Source: Macrostomum hystrix (taxonomy: Eukaryota > Animalia > Platyhelminthes). From it: DNA of 64,000 nucleotides. The DNA is taken from assembly GCA_950097015.1 (NCBI GenBank), contig CATNEN010000034.1, positions 1,736,001-1,800,000 on the forward strand, written 5' to 3'. Numbering within the stretch: the first letter of the stretch is position 1; each line of letters begins with the position of its first letter. Of the stretch, positions 1-40,139 are shown piece by piece. The notes beneath the pieces were generated by a model, which did not search any database, had not been told where the DNA came from, and saw only the letters and a list, made by a program, of their open reading frames with translations. Position numbers and translations under genes: made by a program.

Positions 1-3000
1 AAGTCGGAGAAGCGAGGAGTTTCCACAGCGTCGCCTAGCAGACAGGGATTGGTCTCGGCGAGGCTGTCCCTGTGGAGGCATGACGACAGAAAGATTGAGA
101 AGCTGCTTAAATTATGCACTGAAAACTGTAAAGTAAACAAAATATTGCAAGACTGTTTGGACACAACAAATGATAGGATGGGCTGCACTTGGCTTAAATG
201 TTTGGAGTGAATGAACCAAGAAAATCATCTTATGATTTTCAATTAAAGACTAGCTTGCAGTGTGTGAATAATGGAGGGATTTGTGTAACATGAATACTCT
301 GCTATTCTCTAAATTTGAGACCAAAATTCGCCATTGTCTAGAGAGTTGTAAAATATGCTTTTGCTTAACGCGCTACTTAAAGTAATGTCACAAGGAAACC
401 TCAGCCATAACGTTTAATCTAATTTTAGAAATGAGCCATGCGCTATTTTTAGAAACAAAGTCATGTGACATGAAACCGGAGAACCGGTTCTCGACAGCTG
501 TATTTGCTTGAATTCCAAATATGGTAATGTTCACCTGAAAAACCCCCAAAACGCAGCCGAACAAACAAGTTTGACCTCACTGTGCAAACATGTATGCCCA
601 ATGTAAACACCCGGTCCTAAACCGGTTTGCCCTAAAATTTTACTATAAATATAAGCGAAAATCCGAGCTGAGAATTCAGACTCGGAGCGGTCCACCGGAC
701 TTCAAAACACCTTACGAAGAAGAGGACTCATCTCTGAGGGAAAGACAAGTGGTAAGCGCTTTACTAGACAGAGTTATTTATTGCTAGCAATAGTTGTTGA
801 ATTGAACTAAGTTTACGAGAGCCACATATCGTCGATACATTTGAGAAAGGCCTCCTTGTTTCCTAGGATACATTCCTAGAGGATTATTGATTGATTTGAT
901 TTGAGTTATCCGTTATCTTTCGGAGGTAACAAAGAAGACGCCCTTCAGGAGGACCTCATTAGAGATATACAAGAGAGATTTCAATTGTTCACTAGGGCGC
1001 ACGTTTCTATTGTGAATTCCGAGCTCGAGGAAACCGACAAGTAATCTGATTCGCTCTCGTCATTTATTGGCCAACAGACAAACTCAAGCAGCTGCCAGGA
1101 AGACAAAAGAAGACAAGAAGACTACAAAGACTCAAGAAGCAACAGAACCGATACTTCACGGTCGATCAGTACAAGGAGAAGAAGAACCGCCGGCTGTCGA
1201 AGACCAGAAGACTACAAACTACTTAAGGAATAAGAAGCAATTGCAGTAAGTGTCACGTGACTGTTATAAATTCCTAGGCAGTTAATTGTTCCCCATTGTC
1301 TAGAAGTGGGAGTTTCGTGTGTCTGATCAACACGCAAAACTCTTCATTTGAAAATAGAACATGCCCAAAGTGTAGAGTCGAAGTAGAGAACAAAGTTGAT
1401 ATATTCTGTTTAGATACAATTGGTCAGGCTATGTTATAAATAAACAACGCCGCTGCCCATAGGTCATAGTTAGGGGGGTCGGCAGCAGAGCGGTTAAAGC
1501 GTTTGCCTCTCGCACAAAGGTCCCTGAGCTCGATTTCGCGGCGAGGCCACATTTATTTGGGGCGCAGTCGCGGAGAGAAGGCCTGAGGGCTTGTCGTGCA
1601 ATTTACGTCCTTGAGGGCCAACCTCCAAGGCACAGTGAAATGTACACTGCCTGACGATGAGAAAGTCAGGGCAGATGTACACACTTGTGTGCGTGTGTGC
1701 TCAGGAGTCAGCGAAATAGGCAGAATTGCCTCCTCGCTGGCTTCGGGTCTTAGTGTCACTCAATAATGTGCCATTGCCCGCAGCCCTCTTGCAATTATTA
1801 TATTATTATAGGCCATGGTTTTATTTCAGAATTTCTGTAACTGTTCTATTGTCCCTTTCCCATGTGCAATATAACTATGCATTCTAGATCCCAGTTAAAA
1901 TGTCTGTGCTGAAAAAACCACAAATCAGCGTGCGCATTGTAATAAGAACAAAATTAATATGCCTTACTAAAATGAAAAAACAATAAAGATAGATTCTTTA
2001 AATTACCTGATAGCCAGCAGTAGGCCCTCCACAGTGGTAAACTTGCCACCCAGACTGCCCTGCTCAGTTTCAAAGTCCAGCTCGGGAATTTTAATGCCAC
2101 AGGTGTCCGAGACCAGCACGTCACGTGACAGGTCGCAGGGCTCCCTGACGGTCAGCTCAAGTCGAACACCCTGCGGCTCGATGCCGCCGCCGCATTTCAC
2201 ACTGCTGTCCTTGTGACCGCAGGCGTCGCAGGTGGTTGCCATGACGACAACCTCCTTGAAGTAGGGAACCTTGACTAGTTTCATCCGCGACTCCGTCGGC
2301 TGGTTGCAGCTGGGACAATTTACCTGGGTTATTTCAAGAATCGAAATGGTGGAACTTAGAACCCTGACTGTTTCACCTTATAATATTTTTTATCTAAGCA
2401 TATGGAGATTGTCTTATAAAGTAGCTTTTACTGAATTAGCAAACAGAACTGTGTAGCAAACAGGATAACTGTACTTATAAAAATTAATACCTTAGATAAT
2501 TGGCTCAAGGGCTGCATACGGCCGTTAAGTCCATGGACTGGGAGATGGTTGGGGATGGACATTGATGTGGGATGCCATACCCAGCCTTAATTAGCCCAGC
2601 TAATGTTAGTAGGCACCCATTTACCTGAAGCAATGTAGAATTTAGCGTCTTGCCAAAGGACATAAATAGTTTAGGTTGGAGTCAATTAAGAATCGAACCC
2701 CCGACATTTAAGTCATAAAATTTAGTTGAGATTTAGAGATGGTATATAAAAAAAGTAAATTTATTTTACCTTAACTAAAACTAGCCCACTTTGAATCTGC
2801 TGTTAATTAAATTAATTAAAACTTATAGTCACTAAACTATATAATCAAAAGAATTTAATTGCATTCAACAACTTACCTTTACAAATCATGCTAGTTTTTT
2901 GAAGAGCCATATCAGTGTGCGATTTTAATTTATCTTGTGATTTAAGCTAAACCTAGACAGGAAATCTTTATTTCACCATGCCTCACTTATTTATACAGAT

Positions 3001-5500
3001 GGACGAAGGCCGCCAATTATCAAAGTGAACGGGTAAGACAAAAATCGATAAAAAAGTTCATTCTCACCGCCCCAGCCCGCGCCAATCGCGCAGCCAGTCG
3101 GGGTCCCCCAAATCCACCACCCCGAGCAATGTCACACAGGCTACGCAACACAGCGAGGCAGGGGGCCATTTCAGAGTGAATGCCAATAGGGTTTGGGTTT
3201 AGAGGTGCGAACGTCCCGGTCAGAGAAGTATAGGTAATTAGATAGATAAGTGCTAACCCTGCTAATTGGCCTTGTCGATAATATACGACTGAGAGGCAGG
3301 GAGTCCACTTTACTGCTATACTAGGCAGGCAGGCTTTCATAATAAAGGACAGCCCATTGCGTCAATGAATTCTCCCAAAACGCAAGGAGAGAAAAACCAA
3401 CATCGGGTTAAACAATGGTCACCACCAGATCACATTACGCAATGAGGCAAAGAAAAAATTTAAGAACCTACAAGACATCGGATAGTTTCGATCGATTCAG
3501 AATAAAAAAATATAACCCAATATATAGAGGGATTTTTATTCATGTAAAATGTGAACCCAAACTCCATTTAAATGTGATAGCAAAACATTAGTTAAAACAT
3601 GAAGCGGAATTTGATTCAGTGATTAAGGAGGTACTAAATCAACGGGTGTTAGCCATGTAAGGATTTTGCTTCAGTTCAGCCAGCTGCAGCACTGTACAGG
3701 CATTAGCTGGGGTAATTTGGTGTCTGTGGCAACCCCCACCCAGTCCATGGACTGAAGAGCCATTTCAATCCATGAAATAGATAAAGTACATGCCATGTAC
3801 TCGTATTAGTAGACGTAATAATTGACGTCCACTTATGATCAAAGACTGCTTCTCTTACCTGAAAGTTCAACACTTCATCGTAGCGATCAAAATCGTCACC
3901 TGCTGCAGCAATTGCGCCAACTGCCGCAGCCCCATCCTCAGCGTTCGAGTTGCTATTGTTGGCAGCGGTCTCAGCCAGAAGGCCAAGAGCTTCGTCTTCC
4001 TCTGGCGAGCGACGAAAATGTCGAATGCGCAGATTCGGATCCGGCGTTGGGGCCGAAGGATTTTCTAAGAAACTGTTGCCGCTGGGATCTCGCAGGATCA
4101 GAGTGAAGTCCGGACTGGGATAGGCGTTTAGGCGAATAATTTCATAGGCTTCAGACTAGTAAACAAATGCAGATACAGATAAGCTAGGTGTACACTAATA
4201 GGTAGACACAGATAAGCTAGGTGTAGACTAATAGGTAGATACTGATCAGCTAGGTGTACACTAACAGGTAGATACAGATAAGCTAGGTGTACACTAATAG
4301 GTAGATACAGATAACATAGGTGTACACTAACAGGTAGATACAGATAACATAGGTGTACACTAACAGGTAGATACAGATAACATTGGTGTACACTAACAGG
4401 TAGATACAGATAACATAGGTGTACACTAACAGGTAGATACAGATAACATTGGTGTACACTAACAGGTAGATACAGATAACATTGGTGTACACTAACAGGT
4501 AGATACAGATAACATTGGTGTATACTAACAGGTAGATACAGATAACATTGGTATACACTAACAGGTAGATACAGATAACATTGGTGTACACTAACAGGTA
4601 GATACAGATAACATTGGTGTACACTAACAGGTAGATACAGATAACATTGGTGTACACTAACAGGTAGATACAGATAACATAGGTGTACACTAACAGGTAG
4701 ATACAGATAACATTGGTGTATACTAACAGGTAGATACAGATAACATTGGTGTACACTAACAGGTAGATACAGATAACATAGGTGTACACTAACAGGTAGA
4801 TACAGATAACATAGGTGTACACTAACAGGTAGATACAGATAACACAGGTTTACACTAACAAGTAATTACAGATGAGCCAGGTGTAACCAGACAGGTGCAC
4901 AAACTCTGGAGTCTGGATAGTATACAAGTCTCGACAATCCAACTATACTTAATTAATAACTGAGTTGGAGACAGGTTCTCACCTTTCGGACTCGATCAGA
5001 TCACGCACTTTATTAATAAAATTGGCCAGCTTTTCAGCAGCGTCGACATCTGACGCGGCGGTTCCGGCCACCACGCTACGCAAATTGTCCACGATCTCTG
5101 TCAGCACGCCCTCCAGCGTGGTGACGCCGCCCTCGCTGCTGGGGAAGACCGAGTCCAGGTTGGGCAGGCGGATCTCGGCGCCGGGAGAGCGGACCACCTT
5201 CCTATTGAGATCGCTGGGCCGGGTGACTCGCAGCTCGAACTCAACGCCATCGTCCTGAATACGTTCGGCCAGATCGGTGCTGCGGGTCTGATGGCCGCAG
5301 TCCTGGCATTCGAAGCTGGACACAATCACCTCCTTAAAGTAGGGAATGCGGGTCAGCAGCAGGCGGGTGATGCCCTGGCTGTGACAGTTCATGCAGAGCG
5401 ACTCCACCTCCGTTACTTCGAGATCGTCCGCATCCAGGCTGGGGAAGAGCGGGGCCTGCTGAGTGCCGCTGCTGCTCATGACTGAAGCTGGGATGAGCAT
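1..5500 (-). CDS. ZPR1: Zinc finger protein ZPR1 (ZNF259), 4 coding exons visible, 3' end beyond window start
   Basis: Exons 4983-5479 (or 5500), 3859-4114, 2007-2323 and <1-69, with GT-AG junctions in consistent phases (2,0,2). The translation has two C4 zinc fingers (CMNC..CQDC; CPSC..CDAC), each followed by RIPYFKEV/KVPYFKEV, plus FTLILRDPSGNSFLENP and NPCLLGD motifs typical of ZPR1. Exons 2 and 4 are not in the ORF track. Confidence 0.93.
602..1361 (+). mobile_element. Possible solo LTR-like insertion in ZPR1 intron 3
   Basis: Segment starts TGT and ends ACA, flanked by the direct repeat tgcccaa (595-601 and 1362-1368). It contains a TATA-like ctataaatata and a GTAAG donor-like site. There is no second copy or coding region, and 7 bp is atypical for an LTR TSD. 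Confidence 0.3.
1473..1807 (+). mobile_element. tRNA-derived SINE, family A, full length
   Basis: tRNA-like head with A/B-box-like motifs, conserved body shared with 9636-9974 and 26111-26490, and an (ATT)n tail. Degenerate TSD ataggtcatagtt / ataggccatggtt. Confidence 0.8.
2505..2720 (-). mobile_element. tRNA-derived SINE, family B (CORE-like), degenerate
   Basis: Shares ggctgcatac..agtccat.gact, cccattta and gtcttgccaa.ggaca blocks and a B-box-like aatcgaacc with 20160-20371. The reverse complement resembles the CORE-SINE central domain. Confidence 0.55.
3650..3770 (+). mobile_element. SINE family B 3' fragment
   Basis: Contains cagtccatggactgaa and gctggggtaa, matching the 3' part of the family B copies in the opposite orientation. 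Confidence 0.35.
4155..4870. repeat. 33-bp minisatellite in ZPR1 intron 1
   Basis: About 21 tandem copies of ggtgtacactaacaggtagatacagataacat(a/t). Confidence 0.95.
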
Positions 5501-26490: not shown

Positions 26491-27499
26491 GGTTCGAGGG
26501 AATCTCTACGGTAAAATTAATTTCCGAATGTTTCTGGGATTTTCTAAGGTTCGGGATTCCAAATTATAAAAACTGTTTCCCAATTTCTCAGGTATTCCCT
26601 AAGGTTTGGAGGAACCCCTATGCTAAAAATAGCTTCCAAATATCTCGAACTCCCAGAAGTTTCCTAATCTTTGGAATCCTCTACGGTTTGGGGGAATCCC
26701 TATGCTTAAATTATTTTCTGGTTCTATCTGGGATTCCCCGTAGTTTAAGTGAATTGAGCTAAATTTATTTAGTTGTTGATTGCAAATTAAGGTTTGACTC
26801 AGCATCGATGTATTTTGGATGCTCATAATTTCTGAGTTTGAATCCAGCTTAGCTACTTTTAGTACAGTTGATAGTATTATGGTTATAAATTTATGCATTT
26901 TAGTGCACCATTTCTAGATCACACACTGTGAATGCGATCTCTTAGAATCTCAGATATGTTGTGTTAAATGTGGTGAAGCAAAAAAATTGTTCCACAAGCA
27001 ATGCTTTAAAGCTGTGTGATAAAATACACAAGCACATGTAGATTGTTGTAAATATTTGTTTGTTTGGTTTTTGTTTGAAAATATACCCCCTGGTAATGAG
27101 AGTACTTGAAAGAATATGAAATAATGGTAACTTGGTAAAATGTAATTTTTTTTTAAACCGAAAGTTTTAAGTGGAACATTTGAGAGAAATTAATGACACC
27201 TAATCCAGTTAGGCCATATTACAGCTGAAGGGATATTCGCAGTTTACCAAGTTGCTGTGTACAGCTCTTCAGTAATTTCAGCTCAGCACAAAACAAATTG
27301 TAATGCTGAAGGGCAAAAATAATTTCTGCTTACCGACCTCTCGGTAAAGGTTGCACTGAGTTTACTACTGAGAGAGCGACCGGATCACGTGATTTGCCAG
27401 CTTGGCTGCGATTGGCTGAGGTCGGACTGAGGTGGGGTTCGAGAGAGGACATTTGAAGGTTAGGGTTGATGACTAATCAGGGGGTATAGAAAATGGGCG

Positions 27500-27619
27500 A
27501 CTACAAGCACTTGCATAACCGAAGCTATGCAGAGATAAGGGTCTTGCTAGCGGAGTGGAGTCAAGTAACGAACCCCCGACCTTAAAGTCGTTAGTATGAC
27601 GCTCTAACCACTTGGCTAC
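27500..27619 (-). mobile_element. SINE family B 5' fragment
   Basis: Reverse complement reads tgtagccaagtggttagagcgtc...aaggtcgggggttcgttac...gcaagacc, matching the heads at 20371 and 53326. Confidence 0.5.
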
Positions 27620-27703
27620 AATCCCTTTGACGGGGAAAACATAAGGATTAATAATTGGAAAATTGTATGTGCGACATTGTGTTTCGCATTGAATCTCGTC
27701 AAA

Positions 27704-30700
27704 TCAATTCTGGTTGCCGTCGACGCCGCCGTTGCCGCGTCTGGCTAGACTTGACGGCGACGGCTGCAGCTTAGGATGTTCAGCGCCACCGCTGTAGGCC
27801 TCCAGGCCGTTTCTAGCCACGTAGTCACGCAGCCACAAGGCCAGGTACTCGATGGGATCGGCCGGTCGGCGCATGGCAACCTCGGCTACGCCAATAGACA
27901 GAGCTTTCGCTGAAAAGTATTCAAATTTTCAATGATTTTCTACCGAATGAAACGCTTTCTTTCAATGACTCAAAAATACCTTTGTACAGACGTCATTTTG
28001 CTTTTTCCAATGAGCCAGACTTTGACCTTCAAATGTACCCTGCGCAATGGCGCCACTCACCCACGGCCCTGAGCTCCCACGGGAAGCTGCGATAGCGCAT
28101 ATCGACGGCCGCTCCGGCTGTGGCCGCCACCCCAGCCGCCTGCGCCTGCAGCTGTGGCTGAACGAGCTGCGGCCTGGCCACCTCCGCTCTTCTTAGTCGC
28201 CGACGAAAGTTCAGCGATGCTGACGTCGACGCCGATGCTGACATCGACTGAGCCGACGGAGGCTGCGGCAGATCTGGTGGTTGTAGCCGAAATTTCACCT
28301 GCTTAACGCCCACGCTGGCGCCGACTGCAACCTCCGCGGTGTTATCTTCATCGTTGTCATCGCTGCCGATGCTTTTCACCTCCGTCAGGGTGCCGCTGCT
28401 TCCACCACCGGACTGGCAGCGGCTGAGGTCCTCGGAGCTTGAGGTTGACGAGGAGTCTCCGATGACGGAAGCTCCGGAGACGGAGATTAAGGATGGATGG
28501 AGGCTGTCGCGCCGTCTTTCATGTTTACGCCCGCAGTGGCGCTTGCTTCTGCCCGCATCGCTGGACGGTGACTGCAGTAGGTGGCGGCTGTGGCTGCCAC
28601 GGCCGCTGCAGCTGGGCCCGGCTTCGGCCCCGTCGGAGTCTTCGCTGTCGTCAGTCCCGCCGGCGGCTTCCCTGCAGATTCGCTGCAGCGTCTGGCTTGC
28701 CGACGCGCTGGTGGTGGTGTTCTCCGTGTTCTCGTCGGAGCTGTCGTCCAGCTTGCCGCGGTCGATGTCCAGCCACTCCGTCAGCTGCTGGTACTCCAGA
28801 CTGGCCTGAATGGACGATAGCGGGCTACGCTGCGGCTTGTGTTGATTTCCTGCATTACTGCCCGCAATTTGACATTTTAGATTTAGGGTTAGGGTTCGGG
28901 GCTAGAGTAATGGGATGGGCATACAGTAATGTGGATTATTCAACTTTAGCGGATTCTCAACTTATCCTGTCCAAAAAATGGAACACCTCACCTTGTTGGA
29001 GCGGCCCAGGAGGTAGTATGTGACCATGCGGCCCTTGCCCTTCACCTCCACCGGTTCTCTGCGCTCAACCTCGTACGGAAAGTCGTCAATGCAGCGCTGA
29101 AAGCTCTCGCTGATATGGATAGTGTCCGGCCGGCCGCATGACATCATCCGGGAGGCCACGTTGACGGTGTCGCCAAATAGGCAGTAGCGCGGCATCTTCA
29201 GGCCAACAACGCCGGCGACAATGCTGCCGGAATGGCAGCCGACTTGAATGCGCAACGACTCGAAGGTATCTGCTGAGGGCGAGCAGCCGCCGCTGCTGCC
29301 GCCTCCGCCACCGCTTGCGGTGCCCGAAGGTCGCACAATGCGCCGGGCCTCGGCCACCATGTCCAGCGCCATTTCGGCGATGTGCGCCGCGTGGTAAGGC
29401 GTAGCTCGAGGCGCGCCGGACATCAGCATGTAGGAATCACCGATGGTTTCAACCTGAGTTGGTTTTGTGTTGACTTTGTGCGTGTTTTGTGTGGTCTTTG
29501 TGCGTGTTTTATGTGGTCTTTGTGCGTGTTTTATGTGGTCTTTGTGTGTGTTTTATGTGGTCTTTGTGTGTGTTTTCTGTGGTCTTTGTGCGTGTTTTGT
29601 ATGGGTTTTTGTGCGTGTTTTATGTGGTCTTTGTGCGTGTTTTATTTGGTCTTTGTGTGTGTTTTGTGTGGTCTTTGTGCATGTTTTATGTTGTCTTTGT
29701 GCGTGTTTTGTATGGGCTTTTGTGCGTGTTTTATGTGGTCTTTGAGCGCGTTTTGTGTGGGTAATTGCGGACCGTGTGTGGGTTTTTGTGTGGGTTCTAA
29801 CTGGTATTGATAACTATACATTCTTGAAATTGCCAAGTTCACCAAAAAAGTAGTTTTAGCGAGACCTTATAAACCCGGTGCTTCTCAAGTCGCAAGTCGA
29901 ATCTTGTGTACATTGTGTTGAGCAGGTTGACAATGTCTGTGACTGACAGTTGTCGACAAATTTCTTGGAAATCCACCACCTTGCTAAAGCAGATGCTAAC
30001 AGATTCGTGTGTCTGCAACAGGAGAAATGTCTAATTAGACAGTTGAGTGTCTAATTTACTTTTCGACAAAATTAATTTAGTAATTAGTAATTTAGATATT
30101 AGTAAAAAAGCTTATTGAATCACAATGAGTTTGCAGCTGGGAAAATGTTTCCGACATGCCTACTAGATTGTCGCTATTTTCGCTATGCTACGCGATTCCT
30201 GAGAAAGTCCAGGGCAGATGTACACACCTGTGTGAGCGTATTGTTATAATTATTACTATAATTAAGGTATTTCTGACTGGCCGTAATTACTGCATCAAAT
30301 TGGCTAATTTATTGTAGAAAAATGAAGTCGTGGCATTTCTGCAGCTCCGACAGTGGAATGAGATGGATAATTGTGGGCAGCCTTTCTGCCACAAGCCACA
30401 TCTAGCACTTTCTTCGTTCTCAAAGTTTGAGTCATCATAAACCTTAATCGTGGTCATCGGATCGAGTCCCTTGCGCAGCTTCCTGGCCACGGATTTCGGC
30501 AGGCACTCGAACAGCAGACTGTCTGCTCGCTTCCGCTCCCTGTCCAGCTTCCGCATGCTCAGCTCCATCTGGCGGCTCTGCTCTTGTTGCTGGGATAGAG
30601 TGACGGGTGGGGTGGGCGCGAAACTATTGCCACTCCCCAATCGGTGCTTCTGTCACTCCACAACCAGTGCTCTAGTCACTCCCCAACCAGTGCTCTAGTC

Positions 30701-32897
30701 ACTCCCAATCAGTGCTCTAGTCACTCCCTATCAGTGCTCTAGTCACTCCCAATCAGTGATCTAGTCACTCCCCAAGAAGTGCTCTAGTCACTCCCAATCA
30801 GTGCTCTTCTCACTCCCCAATCAGTGCTCTAGTCACTCCCAATCAGTGCTCTTCTCACTCCCCAATCAGTGCTCTTCTCACTCCCCAATCAGTGCTCTTC
30901 TCACTCCCCAATCAGTGCTCTTCTCACTCCCCAATCAGTGCTCTTCTCACTCCCCAATCAGTGCTCTTCTCACTCCCCAATCAATGCTCTTCTCACTCCC
31001 CAATCAGTGCTCTTGTCACTCCCAAGCCACTGCTCTAGTCACTCCTGATTCTCACTCTAGTCACTCCCAATTATTTCATTAGTAACTCTCCAATTAGTAT
31101 CAGGTAGATGACCTGTCTGAGCAACTCGAACAGCTCTTCAGACTGTTGATCTCCGGCCAGAGCCAAATCTCGGCTGCAGTCGTGCAGGCTCAGGTCGTTC
31201 AGGTACACATTCTTCATGGCCATCTCCTGAGTGTTCTTGATCCTGAGTAGGTTTTTCCGGGTTCTAGTGAGAGAATTTAAACTAAAAAATGCTTCAATAA
31301 AAATTGCTGACCTCGGCGAGCAAATGTAGAGCAGACGATCCCAGGTTGACATGTAGATCATCTGGCCCTTGAATCGGACAAAAGTAGAATCATCTGACCG
31401 GCTCCAGCTGGTCTCATCCGACCTGTCCGAATGTACTCTATCCGGCAAGGCTCGTCGAACGCCGCCTGAGGCCACGCGGCTGTAGGCCGCTATTTCAAAG
31501 ATATTGTGCCGATGCTTCAGGAACTGTCAAATATGATTAGCGGGGTGTTGTTGGGGTTGTGGGTTGTCGAACGTCTCCGATTGGCTGGGGTGGTATTGGG
31601 ATAGAGGGTCGCAAATTAATGCCATTGGATGGAGTGAGATTGGGGTGGCGAGGAAATTCTGTCTAACCCTCCTTTAATGAGAGAGAGAAGATAATTAGAG
31701 AGGGTTGGACGCCGATGCCTGCAGGCTATTACGCAATTTAAGTCCATAAATAATATCGCTGCATTCTATTGACCAGTCCAATTCAGCCTAACCTCATCCC
31801 AGCAGCAGTCGATAAACGGTCTGATCAGCAGGAAGTTGCTGCCAAATTTGGCGCCAGCCGTGTCGCCCATGATGTTGGCGAAGCCGCTGCCTGCGGCACT
31901 GACATTCAAATCCCGATCCAAAGCCAGGTAGTACGGGAACAGGGTGATGAAGTCGCGATACGGTACTACGTAAGAGTCCGGATCGATGATGGTATATAAG
32001 CTGCTGCGCTCGCCTGAGTAGGCCACGTTGTCAAAGGTGAGCTGATACACGTACAGACTGTAGGCTCCCTGACGGTTGCTGTCGACCAGGCTGATGTCAA
32101 GCTCCAGTTGGTACAGAACTCTGGCTATTGTGTACAGCTGCCCGCGGGCGTAGTGGTGAAAACCCGGCCGGCGGGTCTTGTAGAGAATGCGCATTCCTGC
32201 AGCATCAGGAAATAAAATTTGTTGATTGCTACTGGAACTAATGCCGTGCGATTGATTACTGTGTCTACCTGTGAATGGGTGGCATCTTCGGTTGGAATCG
32301 TAGCCTAGAACTAATTGCTGAGGCAGTTGGCTATTAGTGAGGCAGTGGGGCTTTTGTGGAGGCAGTGGGGCTATTGTGGAGGCAGTGGGGCTATTGTGGA
32401 GGCAGTGGGGCTATTGTGGAGGCAGTAGGGCTATTGTGGAGGCAGTGGGGCTATCGCTGAGGCAGAGGGGCTATCGCTGAGGCAGTTGGGCTATTGTTGA
32501 GGCAGTGGGTCTCACCAGTGGGACTTTCATCGGCCACAATGAAGGTAGGCGGCCGAATTCTAGGATAGGAGAATCTCAGATGCTCGTGCAGGTTGTCAAT
32601 GCCGTGACAGAAGTCACGCAGGTGACGCCCCATGACCCGCAGAACCTTATCGTAGCCGTACTTGGCCAGGTAGCCGACAAAGAAGCAGCCATTCTCGAAT
32701 GTCAGCTGATCAACGGACAGTCCGGTGAGGCTGGAAGCGGCCTGGAACAGCTGCATCAGCAGTTGCTCATTGTAGCTTCGTCTGGTCTCGAATGTCGGAT
32801 GGCGGCACTCGGCCAATTCTCGAATTTTAGCCCACGCCTGAGCGCCGTAGGTGTGCTCAAGATAGTGCTGCACTCCTTCTAGTAGAATTCCGTACAT
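27704..32897 (-). CDS. Atypical soluble guanylyl cyclase (Gyc88E-like: H-NOX - PAS/H-NOBA - coiled coil - cyclase), predicted C-terminal Dpy-30 motif, 9 exons, about 944 aa
   Basis: Exons 32516-32897, 31793-32196, 31312-31523, 31113-31242, 30443-30589, 29866-30012, 28992-29453, 28061-28805 and 27704-27909; all GT-AG, total 2835 nt, frame intact. Motifs MYGILLE, GYDKVLRVMGRHLRDF..GIDNLHEHL, YLNDLSLHDCSRD, VYKVETIGDSYM, GVVGLKMPRYCLFGDTVNVASRM and VKGKGRMVTY. The last exon (Dpy-30) is less certain than the cyclase core. Confidence 0.9.
29460..29790. repeat. ~22-bp GT-rich minisatellite in guanylyl cyclase intron 6
   Basis: Tandem tgtggtctttgtgcgtgtttta. Confidence 0.9.
30203..30262 (+). mobile_element. 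Short internal fragment of SINE family A
   Basis: gaaagtccagggcagatgtacacacctgtgtgagcgta followed by an ATT-rich tail, in guanylyl cyclase intron 5. Confidence 0.5.
30645..31070. repeat. 21-22-bp minisatellite in guanylyl cyclase intron 4
   Basis: Tandem cactccccaatcagtgctct(t/ag)t. Confidence 0.9.
32330..32510. repeat. 20-bp minisatellite in guanylyl cyclase intron 1
   Basis: About 9 copies of gaggcagtggggctattgtg. Confidence 0.9.
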
Positions 32898-33544: not shown

Positions 33545-34975
33545 CCTCTGGTCATTCTATTCAGTCATAACCCTCATCCAATCTTCCGGTCATTCTATTC
33601 AGTCATAGCCCTCATCCAATCTTCCGGTCATTCGATTCCGTCATGATATTCATCCAGTATTCTGGTCATTCTATTCAGTCATAACCCTGATCCATTCTTC
33701 TGGTAATTCTATTCCGTCATGATATCCATCCAATCTTCTGGTAATTCTATTCCGTCATGATATCCATCCATTCTTCTGGTAATTCTATTCCGTCATGATA
33801 TCCATCCAATCATCTGGTCATTCTATTCAGTCATAACCCTTATCCAATCTTCTGGTCATTCTATTCCGTCATGATATCCATCCAATCTTCTGGTAATTCT
33901 ATTCCGTCATGATATCCATCCAATTTTCTGGTCATTCGATTCCGTCATGATATCCATCCATTCTTCTGGTAATTCTATTCCGTCATGATATCCATCCATT
34001 CTTCTGGTAATTCTATTCCGTCATGATATCCATCCAAACTTCTGGTTATTCTATTCCGTCATGATATCCATCCAATCTTCTGGTCATTTTATTCCGTCAT
34101 AATATCCATCCAATCTTCTGGTCATTCTATTCCGTCATGATATCCATCCAATTTTCTGGTCATTATATTCCGTCATGATATCCATCCAATCTTCTGGTCA
34201 TTCTATTCCGTCATGATATCCATCCAATCTTCTGGTCATTCTATTCCGTCATGATATCCATCCAATCATCTGGTCATTCTATTCAGTCATAACCCTTATC
34301 CAATCTTCTGGTAATTCTATTCCGTCATGATATCCATCCAATCTTCTGGTCATTCTATTCCGTCATGATATCCATCCAATCTTCTGGTCATTCTATTCCG
34401 TCATGATATCCATCCAATCTTCTGGTAATTCTATTCCGTCATGATATCCATCCAATCTTCTGGTAATTCTATTCCGTCATGATATCCATCCAATCTTCTG
34501 GTAATTCTATTCCGTCATGATATCCATCCAATCTTCTGGTCATTCGATTCCGTCATGATATCCATCCAATCTTCTGGTTATTCCATTCCGTCATGATATC
34601 CATCCAATTTTCTGGTTATTCCATTCCGTCATGATATCCATCCAATTTTCTGGTTATTCTATTCCGTCATGATATCCATCCAATCATCTGGTCATTCTAT
34701 TCAGTCATAACCCTTATCCAATCTTCTGGTCATTCTATTCCGTCATGATATCCATCCAATCTTCTGGTTATTCCATTCCGTCATGATATCCATCCAATCT
34801 TCTGGTCATTCTATTCCGTCATAACCCTTATCCAATCTTCTGGTCATTCTATTCCGTCATAACCCTTATCCAATCTTCTGGTCATTCTATTCAGTCATAA
34901 CCCTTATCCAATCTTCTAGTCATTCTATTCAGTCATAACCCTTATCTAATCTTCTGTTTATTCTACGCAGTCAGT
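33545..34975. repeat. 38-bp minisatellite
   Basis: About 37 copies of tctggtcattctattccgtcatgatatccatccaatct, with an interspersed ataacccttatcc variant. Confidence 0.95.
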
Positions 34976-35869
34976 CATTCTAATCAATGACTGAGTAGAA
35001 CTCAGCCATTTATTCATCCAGTTCCGTCATGATCGTGCTCTCGCGATATCCTCGTCATGCAGACGTGTCCTCGATAGCAACTGATTTAGGAGCTCGCTAG
35101 AACACTGGAAATTGGGGAAAAAAGCTGGCTAATCCCAAACCAATAGGATATTTGAACAACGCCCTGAGTGGATGAGAAACAGGAAAGCAGAAAGAAAAAC
35201 AAGTGCCAAGGTGATCAGGTCGGCCAATTTCTACTAAAGCATAGTTAACAGCGATGACAGCTTTAAGTCGTAATTCACTTCGCCTTCCGTTGCTCTTGTA
35301 AGAAAGGAAATTGTCTTCTCAAAAGAGTCACCAGCTGCTTTTAAAGTTGGTTTCAATTTCAGTTTTGCGTTATCATTTTCCGCTGTGCCAATGCATTTAC
35401 TTTCAGACAGACTCTATTTTGACTACTGTGAGTAGAAAGGCGAAAAGCAAGATTATTTTGTTTGTAAGTTTAGAAAGATAAAATTAATTTCTTATCCTTT
35501 TTATTTAGACTATCAGTGAGGTGGTCACTCGGGTAGAACTCTTTGAAACCAAGCCCAAAGAGAGTAATGAAATTGGAATTTTTTTAACCAAAATTCAGTA
35601 AGCCATTCGCTCAGTGAAGAGCTTAGGATTAGAAAACGACAATTAAAAAAATCGTCTAGCTATTTTAGAACTTTAAAAAAAAATTGCAACTAAAATAAAA
35701 TATGTAAAGCTGGGAGTGAAATGTCCTTGATAACCTCTAGAAATCATGGAAACAATAACAAATATAATAAATATTTTTGCAGGTCTATTAATAGCAATAT
35801 TTTCTAGCAAGACACTTCTTCAGTTCACTGAATTATCGATATGACATCGTAACAATAAACATTCCTGTA

Positions 35870-36295
35870 GGGCAGGAAACACTCCTGTCTAACAGGAAAC
35901 ACTCCTGTCTAACAGGAAACACTCCTGTCTAACAGGAAACACTCCTGTCTAACAGGAAACACTCCTGTCTAACAGGAAACACTCCTGTCTAACAGGAAAC
36001 ACTCCTGTCTAACAGGAAACACTCCTGTCTAACAGGAAACACTCCTGTCTAACAGGAAACACTCCTATCTAACAGGAAGCACTCCTATCTAACAGGAAGC
36101 ACTCCTATCTAACAGGAAGCACTCCTATCTAACAGGAAGCACTCCTATCTAACAGGAAACACTCCTATCTAACAGGAAACACTCCTATCTAACAGGAAAC
36201 ACTCCTATCTAACAGGAAACACTCCTATCTAACAGGAAACACTCCTATCTAACAGGAAACACTCCTGTCTAACAGGAAACACTCCTGTCTAAAGG
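35870..36295. repeat. 20-bp minisatellite
   Basis: About 21 copies of aacaggaaacactcct(g/a)tct. Confidence 0.95.
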
Positions 36296-36430: not shown

Positions 36431-37813
36431 TCAGAAGATCATCGGCACAACCTTGTAGGGCACCAGTTTGCAGTACTCAGTCCAGTACTTGCCATACTTC
36501 TCGCGGCACTTTTTATCGTCACGAAAGCTACGATGGAACAGCAGAATGGACAGGAAGATAAAGTACAGATAGGGGATCACGTGACAACCGGAGCCGCACA
36601 CCGCCGACCAGCACAGCGTCAGGCTGAGCTCCGGGATGTAATGGAAGTGACGCGACACGGCCCAGAAGCCGCTGGCCAGAAGCACCGACTCTCGCTCTTC
36701 GCCGCTGTCCAGCCGGTACTTGGCCCGGATCACCCGCGCCTGCCGGCCCCAGATGGTCAGCAGGCCGTCAGCGGCTCTGGCGGCCTGCTTCTGCCAGTCG
36801 CTCCAGTAGTTCACAGCCAGGCTGGCCAGGCCCGCGATGAGCAGGGCGGCAGTCCAGGCCGGACCAATGGCCTGGCCCTGGCGCACCATGAACAGGCTCA
36901 CCAAAGTGTAGAAGCTGGGCACGAAGCACAGGCAGCCCCAGCAGATGTAGAATCCGGCCCTGTCCGTGATGATGTCGATTGTGCGATAATAGCCAGCCTC
37001 CCACCAGAAGAATTTGGTCAGGTAGAGCAGCTGCAGCACTGTCGTGACCGCCACGCCGTCAACCACTCTTCCGTGAAGCTCGTAGCTTTTCAGAGCGAAC
37101 AGAGCCACCGCCAGGGCCCAGACGGTCAGGCCGAAGCGACAATTCGTGAACACTTTCACATCGATGCCGAAAATCCTCGGATAGAGCTCCGTGCCCCAGT
37201 AATAGTCGAACAGAAAGTTGCCGCTGCGACCGTGGTCAGTGGAGGTCGGAGCTAAGATTCCTTTGACGCAGAGCAGCAGACAGAAGACTAGGCTAAGCAG
37301 GATCGTGGAGGCTAGGAAGTCTCCGTAGTGATCGTACACGACAGTCGGCGTCAGGCCTCGCTGTTTCAAATATACCGTGCCGGCTGCGAATGTTGCCATG
37401 GTGATGAGGTAGCAAGCGAAGCCGTTGTCGCGGTACTCTGGCACGTGACCAGTTGGCGTCTCGGTGCCGTAGCTGACAGGCCCGGGAACCAGCAGCATCA
37501 GGAGCACCTGGAAGGCGCAGAATGCCAGAATAGCCGCGTACACAGCCCAATTAGTGACGCTAATCGAGGCCCAGACAATGCCAGGACCGCCGTGATTGGC
37601 CAGCCTGCGTCCCAGTTCCACTAGGCTGCCTTCGCAGTGCACGGAGGCGTACCAAAGATACATCACCGACTGCGGCACTAGCAGGATCAGCAGCAGGGGC
37701 ACCATGGTGCGGTTGAACAGCTTCGACAGGGTACCCTCCAGCTGCTTCTTGGTCGGCGGACGCTGCAGGCCACCGCTGGCTGGCGGTCTGGGGCTTCGCC
37801 CTTTCGCTACCAT
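36431..37813 (-). CDS. DHCR7: 7-dehydrocholesterol (sterol delta-7) reductase, ERG4/ERG24 family, intronless, DWF5-type
   Basis: 460-aa multi-TM ORF with TPTGHVPEYRDNG, SGNFLFDYYWGTELYPRI, DVKVFTNCRFG, KFFWWEAGY..TIDIITDRAGFYICWGCL, LLASGFWAVSRHFHY, HRSFRDDKKCREKYG and YCKLVPYKVVP motifs. Confidence 0.93.
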   Translation of the reverse strand: MVAKGRSPRPPASGGLQRPPTKKQLEGTLSKLFNRTMVPLLLILLVPQSVMYLWYASVHCEGSLVELGRRLANHGGPGIVWASISVTNWAVYAAILAFCAFQVLLMLLVPGPVSYGTETPTGHVPEYRDNGFACYLITMATFAAGTVYLKQRGLTPTVVYDHYGDFLASTILLSLVFCLLLCVKGILAPTSTDHGRSGNFLFDYYWGTELYPRIFGIDVKVFTNCRFGLTVWALAVALFALKSYELHGRVVDGVAVTTVLQLLYLTKFFWWEAGYYRTIDIITDRAGFYICWGCLCFVPSFYTLVSLFMVRQGQAIGPAWTAALLIAGLASLAVNYWSDWQKQAARAADGLLTIWGRQARVIRAKYRLDSGEERESVLLASGFWAVSRHFHYIPELSLTLCWSAVCGSGCHVIPYLYFIFLSILLFHRSFRDDKKCREKYGKYWTEYCKLVPYKVVPMIF

Positions 37814-38774: not shown

Positions 38775-39580
38775 GTCTGTTCTGTAACAGGCTGTTCTGT
38801 GACTATATGTTCTGTAACAGGCTGTTCTGTGACTATATGTTCTGTAACAGGCTGTTCTGTGACTATATGTTCTGTAACAGGCTGTTCTGTGACTATATGT
38901 TCTGTAACAGGCTGTTCTGTGACTATATGTTCTGTAACAGGCTGTTCTGTGACTATATGTTCTGTAACAGGCTGTTCTGTGACTATATGTTCTGTAACAG
39001 GCTGTTCTGTGACTATATGTTCTGTAACAGGCTGTTCTGTGACTATATGTTCTGTAACAGGCTGTTCTGTGACTATATGTTCTGTAACAGGCTGTTCTGT
39101 GACTATATGTTCTGTAACAGGCTGTTCTGTGACTATATGTTCTGTAACAGGCTGTTCTGTGACTATATGTTCTGTAACAGGCTGTTCTGTGACTATATGT
39201 TCTGTAACAGGCTGTTCTGTGACTATATGTTCTGTAACAGGCTGTTCTGTGACTATATGTTCTGTAACAGGCTGTTCTGTGACTATATGTTCTGTAACAG
39301 GCTGTTCTGTGACTATATGTTCTGTAACAGGCTGTTCTGTGACTATATGTTCTGTAACAGGCTGTTCTGTGACTATATGTTCTGTAACAGGCTGTTCTGT
39401 GACTATATGTTCTGTAACAGGCTGTTCTGTGACTATATGTTCTGTAACAGGCTGTTCTGTGACTATATGTTCTGTAACAGGCTGTTCTGTGACTATATGT
39501 TCTGTAACAGGCTGTTCTGTGACTATATGTTCTGTAACAGGCTGTTCTGTGACTATATGTTCTGTAACGGACTGTTCTAT
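38775..39580. repeat. Near-perfect 30-bp minisatellite
   Basis: About 26 identical copies of tgttctgtaacaggctgttctgtgactata. Confidence 0.97.
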
Positions 39581-40139
39581 GATAGACAAGCTGTTCTTTA
39601 AGCGACAGTTTCTGATATTTTCACATACATTTTGACAAATACGAGTAAAACCCTGAAGTTACACTAAAAAGTTAAATTTGTCGCTTCCTCAGCCAGGGGG
39701 TATTATTAGCTGGCTAGACTAGCGCAGGAAGTCCTCATTGAACTGTTTACTCATTCAAATTTTACAGGTGCGCTGAAGATTCAGAAAATAAGTGCACAAT
39801 TGTACTTTTAGCTTGATACCACCACACCAGCTAGTGTGAGGTCAAACACAGCCAGAGCTATACGATAAAGGCTTTGCGTGCAGATAAATATTATCAGCAG
39901 AACTTCAGGCTCTGACGTGTTAACTCAGTGCAAATATATATTGCTTGAAGAAGCCTATATTGCGACTGCTTTTCGATAAGGAAATGAAAATTCGGCTGTG
40001 GGCTGCGGCAGGTTGGGTGTCTGACGTGACTCAGTTAAGAGGGTGCAGAACCCGAGCGCCTTTGCCACTATGACTGTGTCATTGTGTCTCGGAATGAGCC
40101 TTTTAGTCCAGGGGTCGGCAAACTTCAGTTCTTGACCCC

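What the first reader, a model, noticed from the sequence alone, without database searches (positions are those of the whole stretch)
27704..28805. Soluble guanylyl cyclase apparently fused to a C-terminal Dpy-30/DYDC docking motif
Seen: exon 8 of the cyclase stays open through a long Ser/Gly/Asp-rich linker to a strong GTGAGT donor at 28060 (phase 1). A 151-nt intron ends at tacttttcag (27910). The next exon continues in frame as ...ELRAVAKALSIGVAEVAMRRPADPIEYLALWLRDY, and is absent from the ORF track. Known: xxGLAEVAxxRPxDPIEYLAxWL is the Dpy-30 motif (RIIa-like dimerisation/docking fold) of DYDC1/2, NME5 and AK7, several of which are axonemal. I do not recall this motif on soluble guanylyl cyclases. 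Inference: a gas-sensing cGMP source anchored AKAP-style, possibly in cilia or flagella. Skipping the splice gives a stop at 28029, so the docking tail could be switched on or off by splicing.
Basis: partly seen in the sequence, partly recalled or inferred. Interest (0 to 1): 0.82.

Follow-up and report, generated by a model that had tools for sequence, protein, structure and literature searches.

The report
Flatworm gas-sensor cyclase with docking tail
A flatworm gene for a haem-based gas-sensing cGMP cyclase really does end in a small Dpy-30 "dimerise-and-dock" module; all flatworm relatives examined share this design in place of the lipid-anchor signal that other animals carry there, and no paper I could search describes it.

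Summary
A 9-exon minus-strand gene (32897-27704) encodes a 944-aa HNOB-HNOBA-cyclase protein. Its 745-nt tail exon splices (GTGAGT donor at 28060, phase 1, 151-nt intron) onto a last exon carrying a Pfam-significant Dpy-30 motif.

No RNA run could be listed for this species. In Macrostomum lignano, however, the RNA-seq-derived GenBank model BOX15_Mlig007736g1 joins cyclase, tail and Dpy-30 exon at exactly the same codon. Across the junction the two species differ by 20 synonymous and 5 replacement codons.

The same architecture occurs in Schistosoma, Trichobilharzia, Opisthorchis and a monogenean, with the intron at the same position and phase. All flatworm copies form one clade.

None of 64 Gyc-88E-like cyclases from other phyla has the motif, and 54 of them end in a CaaX prenylation box; no flatworm copy does. 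So flatworms appear to have swapped a lipid anchor for a protein-docking domain.

The design is real and old, and it is present as unnamed database predictions, so the novelty is moderate. Ciliary docking remains an inference. All flatworm copies also carry Lys in place of the first metal-binding Asp, so they probably need a partner subunit.

The scan had already noted Dpy-30 terminal exons on NWD/STAND genes of this genome.

The parts
27704..32897 (-). Whole coding part of the gene: 9 exons, 944 aa, HNOB-HNOBA-coiled coil-cyclase-disordered tail-Dpy-30
   Evidence: Exon model with GT-AG at every border. Pfam on the exon pieces. All E1-E8 junctions reproduced in M. lignano protein P0013, and the E8/E9 junction in P0015.
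32516..32897 (-). Exon 1: start codon and most of the HNOB haem domain (proximal His in NLHEHL retained)
   Evidence: PF07700 E 8.6e-33. Best solved relatives are sGC beta-1 H-NOX chains. Conserved in organism B contigs.
31793..32196 (-). Exon 2: end of HNOB (Y-x-T-x-R haem-propionate motif) and start of HNOBA
   Evidence: Pfam; model.
31113..31523 (-). Exons 3 (31523-31312) and 4 (31242-31113): HNOBA/PAS-like part
   Evidence: Pfam HNOBA; junctions match P0013.
30443..30589 (-). Exon 5: end of HNOBA / signalling coiled coil
   Evidence: Pfam HNOBA 177-216.
29866..30012 (-). Exon 6: start of the cyclase domain. Codon 29982-29980 is Lys where class III cyclases have the first metal-binding Asp (FSKVVDF against FSDIVGF)
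   Evidence: Alignments to sGC alpha and beta chains. The same Lys is in all flatworm relatives, and Asp is in other phyla.
28992..29453 (-). Exon 7: rest of the cyclase domain (second metal Asp, guanine-specific Glu/Cys and Asn/Arg retained), with a Gly/Ser-rich loop insertion at about 29262-29328
   Evidence: PF00211 E 1.4e-35; PDB matches. Differences from organism B fall almost only on third codon positions, and the loop is replaced there.
28061..28805 (-). Exon 8: 248-codon Ser/Asp/Gly-rich tail with three conserved islands (28678-28805, about 28351-28433, 28061-28103). The last island encodes the first half of Dpy-30 helix 1
   Evidence: Open frame P about 0.002, GC3 0.75 like the other exons. 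The islands are conserved on one contig of organism B, with alignment ending about 6 nt past the donor. M. lignano P0012/P0013/P0015 carry the same tail.
27910..28060 (-). Intron 8, 151 nt, phase 1, GTGAGT...tacttttcag, GC 0.38; in-frame stop at 28029 if retained
   Evidence: Same position and phase, and an identical donor context, in M. lignano (395 nt) and in Schistosoma bovis (G|GTGAGT).
27704..27909 (-). Exon 9: rest of the Dpy-30 helix-loop-helix (motif to about 27824), a 39-residue disordered end, stop TGA 27706-27704
   Evidence: PF05186 29.7 bits. Best solved relatives are DYDC1, DYDC2 and RSP2. AlphaFold helices 2-13 and 18-33 with pLDDT 91-96, and the top fold matches are all Dpy-30 domains. 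An in-frame stop 7 codons upstream means the exon cannot start a protein that holds the whole domain.
26764..27703 (-). Probable 3' UTR up to the only AATAAA (26769-26764) downstream of exon 7. It contains a very high-copy SINE-like element at 27491-27681
   Evidence: No AATAAA or ATTAAA between 29000 and 26769 on this strand. Repeat depth in contigs of two species. Inferred, not shown by RNA.

Best explanation
This is the Macrostomum orthologue of a flatworm-wide family of Gyc-88E/beta-2-type soluble guanylyl cyclase subunits. Its constitutive last exon, together with the last 13-17 codons of the long tail exon, encodes a Dpy-30-type dimerisation/docking (D/D) helix-loop-helix.

Shown: the exon structure; the Pfam-significant motif; its Dpy-30 fold; a transcript-derived model with the same junction in M. 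lignano; purifying selection across the junction; the same architecture, intron position and phase in trematodes; absence from the orthologues of other phyla, which instead end in a CaaX box.

Inferred: the two tails of a cyclase dimer pair into the usual four-helix D/D bundle, which binds an amphipathic helix of a scaffold, as Dpy-30 domains of DYDC, RSP2 and DPY30 do with RSP3 or Ash2L. The haem sensor and cyclase would thus be fixed at a defined site, most likely ciliary or dendritic-ending structures. On this view the D/D domain took over the targeting role played by C-terminal prenylation in other animals. The long disordered tail acts as a tether.

Because the first metal-binding Asp is Lys, the subunit is beta-like. 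It probably makes cGMP only with a partner subunit that supplies that residue.
For: Gene model and domains.

Coding tail: open frame P about 0.002, GC3 0.75 and 0.68, no poly(A) signal before 26769, and exon 9 unable to stand alone.

M. lignano: P0015 (BOX15_Mlig007736g1) carries Guanylate_cyc + Dpy-30 and has the identical ...FPWELRAV-A-KALS... junction. The GenBank annotation of that assembly is built from a genome-guided RNA-seq transcriptome (PMC5730564). Locus L015 has the same donor and phase with a 395-nt intron. Substitutions are 5 synonymous / 0 replacement in the last 17 codons of exon 8, a synonymous change in the split codon, and 14 / 5 in exon 9.

Organism B: the end of the tail exon is conserved up to the donor.

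Other flatworms: Dpy-30 lies at the extreme C-terminus of full HNOB-HNOBA-cyclase proteins of eight further flatworm species, with weaker copies in five more. One flatworm clade has support 100, with Macrostomum sister to Neodermata. Intron position and phase are conserved in S. bovis.

CaaX: 54 of 64 non-flatworm relatives end in CaaX, against 0 of 31 flatworm ones. Loss of the putative C-terminal isoprenylation signal of GCY-36 was reported to abolish ciliary localisation (PMC3192831).

Dpy-30 relatives: the nearest solved ones are the axonemal radial-spoke proteins DYDC1/2 and RSP2. RSP3 carries a helix that binds Dpy-30 domains (PMC12399478).
Against: No RNA read of this species could be examined.

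No single M. lignano model spans HNOB to Dpy-30. Two overlapping partial models, 100% identical over 288 aa, do.

Exon 9 was not detected in organism B at 80% likeness. The essential cyclase exon 6 was not detected either, so this says little.

The first 9 positions of the Pfam profile are not matched, and the usual E-Y-L at the start of helix 1 is P-W-E here, so binding properties may differ from canonical Dpy-30 domains.

Nothing here shows a binding partner, a dimer or a location. The CaaX-to-D/D swap is a correlation across clades.
Confidence: 0.62

Rival explanations
1. The Dpy-30 module is real and fused, but it serves only as an extra clamp that holds the two cyclase subunits together or selects the partner subunit. 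It does not dock to any scaffold or cilium.
For: Dpy-30 domains are obligate homodimers (solved DPY30 and DYDC structures are the top fold matches). sGCs work as dimers. The flatworm subunits are half-site (Lys for Asp), so correct pairing matters. Schistosomes keep two tandem paralogues that both carry Dpy-30-type ends.
Against: The domain sits behind about 250 disordered residues, an odd place for a clamp when HNOBA, coiled coil and catalytic domains already dimerise. In other phyla the same position holds a targeting signal (CaaX), not a dimeriser. Every solved Dpy-30 dimer among the matches is bound to a partner helix.
Confidence: 0.25
2. Exon 9 belongs to a separate small DYDC-like gene that starts at the ATG of MRYRSFP (28100-28098) inside the cyclase tail exon. 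The cyclase itself would end at 28029 or earlier.
For: The nearest database relatives of the motif are 71-121-aa proteins with the motif from residue 13, so an ancestral small gene is a likely source. An ATG lies 13 codons before the splice donor (16 residues before the LSIG of the motif).
Against: The frame is open for 235 codons upstream of that ATG, with coding GC3. The RNA-based M. lignano model runs from the cyclase through the tail into the Dpy-30 exon. Trematode orthologues have no Met at that place and are fused too. There is no poly(A) signal between exon 7 and 26769. An additional internal promoter is not excluded.
Confidence: 0.06
3. The fusion is an artefact of gene prediction, or a decaying relic exon with no function.
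For: No RNA of this species was seen. Most trematode entries are automatic 'unnamed protein product' models.
Against: All ten invariant Dpy-30 alignment columns are kept. There is strong excess of synonymous change. Intron position and phase are identical in lineages as distant as Macrostomum and Schistosoma. The motif is present in every flatworm sub-clade of the tree.
Confidence: 0.03

Closest known systems
Macrostomum lignano BOX15_Mlig007736g1 (P0015) with A0A1I8I9Y3 (P0013), and the HNOB-HNOBA-cyclase-Dpy-30 predictions of Schistosoma spp., Trichobilharzia szidati, Opisthorchis felineus and Cichlidogyrus casuarinus (P0022-P0028, P0054, P0058, P0089)
   Same: Same domain order. Same split of the Dpy-30 helix by a phase-1 intron in an Ala codon. 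Same Lys at the first metal site. One clade in the tree.
   Different: These are unnamed or automatically named database entries. Tails differ in length and sequence. Trematodes have two tandem paralogues and, in S. bovis, an alternative last exon that I did not find in the window or in L015.
Gyc-88E / GCY-31 / GCY-36 / mammalian beta-2 type atypical soluble guanylyl cyclases
   Same: HNOB-HNOBA-cyclase core. Nearest named hits are 'soluble guanylate cyclase 88E' and 'gcy-31-like'. A long C-terminal extension ends in a short terminal module.
   Different: 54 of 64 non-flatworm relatives end in a CaaX box and keep Asp in FSDVVGF. The flatworm proteins end in a Dpy-30 domain, have no CaaX and have Lys at that Asp.
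DYDC1 / DYDC2 (small DPY30-domain proteins of axonemal radial spokes) and Chlamydomonas RSP2
   Same: Closest sequence and fold matches of the motif: 9fqr DYDC1 E 3.6e-5; 8wzb and 8j07 DYDC2 rmsd 0.6-0.7 A over 31-33 residues. The RP-x-DPIEYLA-x-WL core is shared.
   Different: Those are small proteins with the motif at the N-terminus and a conserved M-D-S-E-Y-L start. Here the motif ends a 944-aa enzyme and the start of helix 1 has diverged.
   Same: An enzyme of nucleotide metabolism carrying a Dpy-30 docking motif. Radial spokes hold NDK, and in Tetrahymena guanylate kinase and a phosphodiesterase lie near spoke RS3 (PMC12399478).
   Different: None of them is a cyclase or a gas sensor.
C. 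elegans ARCP-1 (ankyrin repeats plus DPY-30 domain)
   Same: A Dpy-30-domain protein that organises cGMP signalling at sensory cilia: it co-localises PDE-1 with guanylyl cyclases in BAG cilia (PMC6953435).
   Different: There the Dpy-30 domain is on the scaffold, not on the cyclase.

Membership tests
Soluble guanylyl cyclase (HNOB-HNOBA-class III cyclase) | N-terminal HNOB haem domain with proximal His and Y-x-S/T-x-R motif | tested here: met
   PF07700 E 8.6e-33. Aligns from residue 1 to beta-1 H-NOX chains. NLHEHL and YKTRR are present in the model (read directly).
Soluble guanylyl cyclase (HNOB-HNOBA-class III cyclase) | HNOBA/PAS-like domain and coiled coil between sensor and cyclase | tested here: met
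   PF07701 on exons 2-5. It is contiguous, profile 4-216, in the M. lignano orthologue P0013.
Soluble guanylyl cyclase (HNOB-HNOBA-class III cyclase) | Class III cyclase catalytic domain | tested here: met
   PF00211 E 4.3e-12 and 1.4e-35 on exons 6 and 7; PDB matches.
Soluble guanylyl cyclase (HNOB-HNOBA-class III cyclase) | Full set of catalytic residues in one chain (needed for activity as a homodimer) | tested here: not met
   The first metal-binding Asp is Lys (FSKVVDF). The second Asp, Glu/Cys and Asn/Arg are present. It therefore has a beta-1-like half site; enzyme activity was not tested.
Gyc-88E / beta-2-type atypical sGC clade | Groups with proteins named Gyc-88E, gcy-31 or beta-2-like rather than with alpha-1/beta-1 | tested here: inconclusive
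   All best hits carry these names, and the flatworm clade is sister to them in the tree. No alpha-1/beta-1 outgroup was included.
Gyc-88E / beta-2-type atypical sGC clade | C-terminal CaaX prenylation box | tested here: not met
   The protein ends ...DGNQN. 0 of 31 flatworm relatives end in C-x-x-x, against 54 of 64 non-flatworm relatives.
Dpy-30 / RIIa-like dimerisation-docking domain (PF05186) | Sequence match above Pfam's gathering score | tested here: met
   29.7 bits on exon 9 alone and 32.4 bits joined; cut-off 22.
Dpy-30 / RIIa-like dimerisation-docking domain (PF05186) | Conserved core residues of the helix-loop-helix | tested here: met
   All ten invariant columns of the alignment with 12 Dpy-30 proteins are kept (L, E, P, D, P, E, Y, L, W, L). 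The E-Y-L at the start of helix 1 is not kept.
Dpy-30 / RIIa-like dimerisation-docking domain (PF05186) | Helix-loop-helix fold superposable on solved Dpy-30 domains | tested here: met
   AlphaFold helices 2-13 and 18-33, pLDDT above 90. The top 24 Foldseek PDB matches are Dpy-30 domains or chains of axonemal assemblies (radial spoke, central apparatus) that hold such domains: DYDC2, DPY30, RSP2, rmsd 0.6-1.1 A for the closest. E-values are weak (0.1 or more) because the domain is so short.
Dpy-30 / RIIa-like dimerisation-docking domain (PF05186) | Forms a homodimeric four-helix bundle that binds an amphipathic helix | not testable with these tools
   Needs biochemistry or a multimer model. 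The joined peptide has no reference and could not be handed to the structure tool.
DYDC1/DYDC2 family | Small protein with the motif at its N-terminus (M-D/E-x-E-Y-L start) | tested here: not met
   The motif is at residues 876-905 of 944, and the ancestral start is replaced (Arg where relatives have Met).

The most novel reading that the evidence does not exclude
In the flatworm stem lineage, a Gyc-88E/beta-2-type gas-sensing cyclase captured the first exons of a DYDC-like radial-spoke gene and lost its CaaX box. Targeting thereby changed from a prenyl membrane anchor to protein docking on an amphipathic-helix scaffold in cilia or sensory endings. In trematodes, alternative last exons make that dock optional, so parasites could move the sensor between compartments or life stages.
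Probability: 0.3. Interest if true: 0.72.

Novelty: new variant of a known kind. Interest (0 to 1): 0.56.

Why it matters
Atypical soluble guanylyl cyclases are the O2/NO sensors of invertebrate sensory neurons, and where they sit in the cell shapes what they sense. This finding gives a phylum-wide natural experiment in which a lipid anchor was exchanged for a protein-docking domain. The hypothesis is directly testable, because M. lignano has transgenesis. The family includes genes of schistosomes and liver flukes, whose ciliated larval stages find hosts by sensory cues. The clade-wide Asp-to-Lys change further suggests that flatworm subunits are obligate partners, which would alter how cGMP signalling in these parasites is interpreted. 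For annotation, it shows that the short last exon is easily lost: several trematode models lack it or use another exon.

Tried and rejected
RNA evidence for this species. Two run searches listed no RNA run, only the probable source DNA run and two DNA runs of a second species. The single reads call could therefore only compare DNA contigs.

Exhaustive search with the last exon. Searching 1.84 billion representatives gave 11 hits: ten short DYDC-like proteins and one spurious WD40 protein. There was no cyclase. The query is too short to see the diverged trematode tails, so this blank was misleading.

Other searches for relatives of the motif.
- The Atlas search gave only small Dpy-30 clusters.
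- The metagenome scan gave 12 Dpy-30 loci, none with a cyclase.
- The context of P0007 was uninformative.
- Exact look-up of window ORFs showed that this genome is not in the protein collection.
- A last word search with the M. lignano Dpy-30 region found only itself.

Full-length query. The 944-aa spliced model has no reference, and I did not type it. The way round was the tail exon by reference, then M. lignano fragment P0012, then its cluster member P0013 (717 aa), then a search by id.

Alternative exon. A search for the trematode alternative last exon in the window and in L015 found only noise.

Rejected readings.
- Non-detection of exon 9 in organism B as evidence of absence, because exon 6 is missed too.
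- P0001 as a relative, because it is a low-complexity match.
- A tRNA at 27560-27620, because ARAGORN finds none.

Literature. Five paper searches combining Dpy-30/DPY30 with guanylyl or guanylate cyclase, sGC or H-NOX found no description of the fusion.
Full report
**What is in the sequence**

On the minus strand, a run that is open in one frame only extends from an acceptor at 28805 to a G|GTGAGT donor at 28061/28060. A 151-nt AT-rich intron ends in tacttttcag. The next exon (27909-27704) continues in phase 1 and reads ...ELRAV-A-KALSIGVAEVAMRRPADPIEYLALWLRDY... to a TGA. Without splicing the frame stops at 28029.

I built the whole gene from the ORF pieces and the splice sites.

Pfam finds:
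- HNOB (E 8.6e-33), HNOBA and Guanylate_cyc (E 1.4e-35) on the upstream exons.
- Dpy-30 (PF05186) on the last exon alone at 29.7 bits against a cut-off of 22.
- Dpy-30 at 32.4 bits, with the profile match extended from 14-39 to 10-39, when the last 17 residues of the tail exon are joined on. The unspliced ending matches nothing.

**Is the tail coding, and is it joined?**

- At its composition, the 248-codon tail exon has a 0.0017 chance of being open. Only 20 of 20,000 shuffles were open, and the other two frames carry six stops each.
- Its GC3 (0.75) and that of exon 9 (0.68) lie within the range of the cyclase exons (0.55-0.82). Intron 8 has GC 0.38.
- The tail exon has no ATG before codon 216, so it must be entered by splicing from exon 7.
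- Exon 9 has an in-frame stop seven codons upstream, and its only ATG lies inside the motif. It therefore cannot supply a whole domain on its own.
- This strand has no AATAAA or ATTAAA between exon 7 and 26769, so a cyclase transcript is expected to run through both splice sites.

**RNA and a second species**

No RNA run could be listed for this stretch. I therefore laid DNA contigs of the probable source run and of a second species from the same study. That species has an orthologous gene.

- The listed differences in exon 7 fall almost entirely on third codon positions. In the tail exon, 7 of the 10 listed do.
- One contig carries three conserved islands of the tail exon. The last covers the VDMRYRSFPWELRAV codons and stops about six bases past the donor.
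- Exon 9 itself was not picked up at 80% likeness. Neither was the indispensable cyclase exon 6, so this blank carries no weight.

**Relatives**

The exhaustive search with the 67-aa last exon found only short DYDC-like proteins of 71-121 aa with the motif from residue 13. This made the separate-small-gene rival look plausible.

The tail exon as a query then hit a Macrostomum lignano fragment, P0012, which reproduces the exon 7/8 junction. Its cluster holds a 717-aa member, P0013, that reproduces every junction from exon 1 to exon 8.

A search with that id returned P0015, M. lignano BOX15_Mlig007736g1. It carries Guanylate_cyc plus Dpy-30 and ends ...VDMRYRSFPWELRAV-A-KALSLGVAEV...GNQN, the same junction and the same end.

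According to the genome paper, the GenBank annotation of that assembly comes from a genome-guided RNA-seq transcriptome with TransDecoder ORFs (PMC5730564). This model is therefore RNA-level evidence in a congener.

In the M. lignano locus (L015):
- The donor context is identical.
- The intron has the same phase but is 395 nt long.
- Across the junction there are 5 synonymous and 0 replacement changes in the last 17 codons of exon 8.
- The split Ala codon has a synonymous change.
- Exon 9 has 14 synonymous and 5 replacement changes.

That fits my finding that M. lignano is the nearest relative, at 87% identity.

**A flatworm-wide design**

Pfam places Dpy-30 at the extreme C-terminus of complete HNOB-HNOBA-cyclase proteins from five Schistosoma species, Trichobilharzia, Opisthorchis felineus and the monogenean Cichlidogyrus. 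A further Schistosoma model (S. intercalatum), truncated at its N-terminus, carries it too. A profile built from these tails finds weaker copies in five more trematode proteins and in none of the non-flatworm proteins.

In a tree of 54 proteins, all flatworm sequences form one clade (support 100) and Macrostomum is sister to the parasitic groups. Dpy-30-bearing members occur in every sub-clade. Together with the conserved intron below, this points to one old gain.

In Schistosoma bovis the penultimate exon ends G|GTGAGT in phase 1, and the Dpy-30 exon completes an Ala codon, exactly as in Macrostomum.

**What the tail replaces**

Of 64 Gyc-88E-like proteins from molluscs, annelids, brachiopods, arthropods, echinoderms, hemichordates, fishes and cnidarians in the same hit list, 54 end in a CaaX box, typically [KR]-S-x-[TA]-C-a-a-L. 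None of the 31 flatworm proteins does.

The literature held here says two relevant things:
- The beta-2 subunit carries an isoprenylation consensus (PMC8200204).
- Loss of the putative C-terminal isoprenylation signal of C. elegans GCY-36 was reported to abolish its ciliary localisation (PMC3192831).

So the C-terminal end of this family is a targeting device, and flatworms carry a different one.

**What the module is**

Its closest solved relatives are DYDC1, DYDC2 and RSP2 of axonemal radial spokes. The AlphaFold model is a confident helix-loop-helix. Its best structural matches are all Dpy-30 domains, several of them bound to a partner helix, although E-values are weak for so short a fold.

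Two papers give context:
- RSP3 carries an amphipathic helix that binds Dpy-30 domains, and enzymes of GMP/cGMP metabolism sit near spoke RS3 in Tetrahymena (PMC12399478).
- In C. elegans, the Dpy-30-domain scaffold ARCP-1 organises cGMP signalling at BAG cilia (PMC6953435).

From this I infer that the two tails of a cyclase dimer form a D/D bundle that docks on a scaffold helix, with the disordered tail acting as a tether. None of this was tested here.

**Caveats on function**

All flatworm members, including both schistosome paralogues, have Lys where class III cyclases have the first metal-binding Asp. The relatives from other phyla keep Asp. The remaining catalytic and guanine-specifying residues are present. 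The subunit therefore looks beta-like and probably needs a partner.

The start of Dpy-30 helix 1 has diverged from the usual E-Y-L.

**A possible switch, but not the one proposed**

In the S. bovis locus, the paralogue B gene has two alternative last exons after the same donor:
- One encodes SNFMRRIDENF...LGC. It is used in the S. mansoni, Trichobilharzia and Fasciola models.
- The Dpy-30 exon lies 1.8 kb further on and is used in the S. bovis model.

I found no such exon in the window or in M. lignano, and nothing supports intron retention here.

**Rivals**

- A pure dimerisation role for the module is the main alternative (about 0.25).
- A separate small gene starting at 28100 is unlikely (about 0.06), given the open coding frame upstream, the M. 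lignano transcript model and the fused trematode proteins that lack a Met at that place.
- An artefact or a decaying exon is very unlikely (about 0.03).

**Novelty and limits**

Five literature searches found no description of a Dpy-30 motif on a guanylyl cyclase. The architecture does, however, already exist as unnamed predictions in public databases for several flatworms. This scan had also noted Dpy-30 last exons on NWD/STAND genes of this genome. I did not test those notes.

I could not:
- run a domain-architecture census over all taxa;
- see RNA of this species;
- submit the full spliced model or the joined peptide to the large search and structure tools, because they have no reference.

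Noticed in passing
window 29980-29982 (-), and proteins P0013, P0017-P0024, P0054, P0058-P0060, P0071: All flatworm members of this cyclase family have Lys in place of the first metal-binding Asp (CF[ST]KV against FSDVVGF in other phyla). This is a clade-wide half-site that suggests obligate pairing with another subunit, or a non-catalytic role.
   Followed up: partly
proteins P0063-P0134 (non-flatworm rows): 54 of 64 Gyc-88E-like cyclases from other phyla end in a conserved CaaX box ([KR]-S-x-[TA]-C-a-a-L), so prenylation seems the rule for this family outside flatworms.
   Followed up: partly
L016 (Schistosoma bovis OX104094.1): 30256-30372, 35297-35380, 37161-37295; upstream gene at 1-4927: Two tandem sGC paralogues. 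The second has two alternative last exons after one phase-1 donor, one Dpy-30 and one unrelated (…NFTEFWE…LGC). Different species' annotations pick different ones.
   Followed up: partly
window 27491-27681: A SINE-like, tRNA-related element lies in the presumed 3' UTR just after the stop. Contig depth is about 28,000 in the source run and about 14,000 in the second species. ARAGORN calls no tRNA in the window.
   Followed up: no
window 30165-30355: A very high-copy repeat in intron 5 has summed contig depth about 117,000 in the source species but almost none in the second species, so it looks like a lineage-specific expansion.
   Followed up: no
window 29262-29328 (-): A Gly/Ser-rich loop inserted in the cyclase domain is replaced by 19 other letters in the second species and by a different stretch in M. 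lignano. It is a fast-evolving surface loop.
   Followed up: no
window 32320-32509, 30631-31071, 29462-29790: Three introns of the gene are largely minisatellites (20-, 23/46- and 22-nt units). They give long spurious ORFs on both strands.
   Followed up: no
window 36431-37813 (-): An intron-less 460-aa ORF of the ERG4/ERG24 sterol reductase family (PF01222, E 2.7e-66) lies 3.5 kb upstream of the cyclase.
   Followed up: partly
window 33547-34936, 35873-36292, 38778-39582: Large tandem arrays: 38-nt unit x 36.6, 20-nt x 21 and 30-nt x 26.8 copies. The last is 99% regular and open in several frames.
   Followed up: no
L010 9395-10396 (+): A metagenome contig encodes a 333-aa protein with a long Pro/Ser/Gln-rich disordered front and an internal Dpy-30 motif (…YQEVEYLKR…RRPADPIEYL…). 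It is another case of the motif behind a disordered tether, with no cyclase.
   Followed up: no
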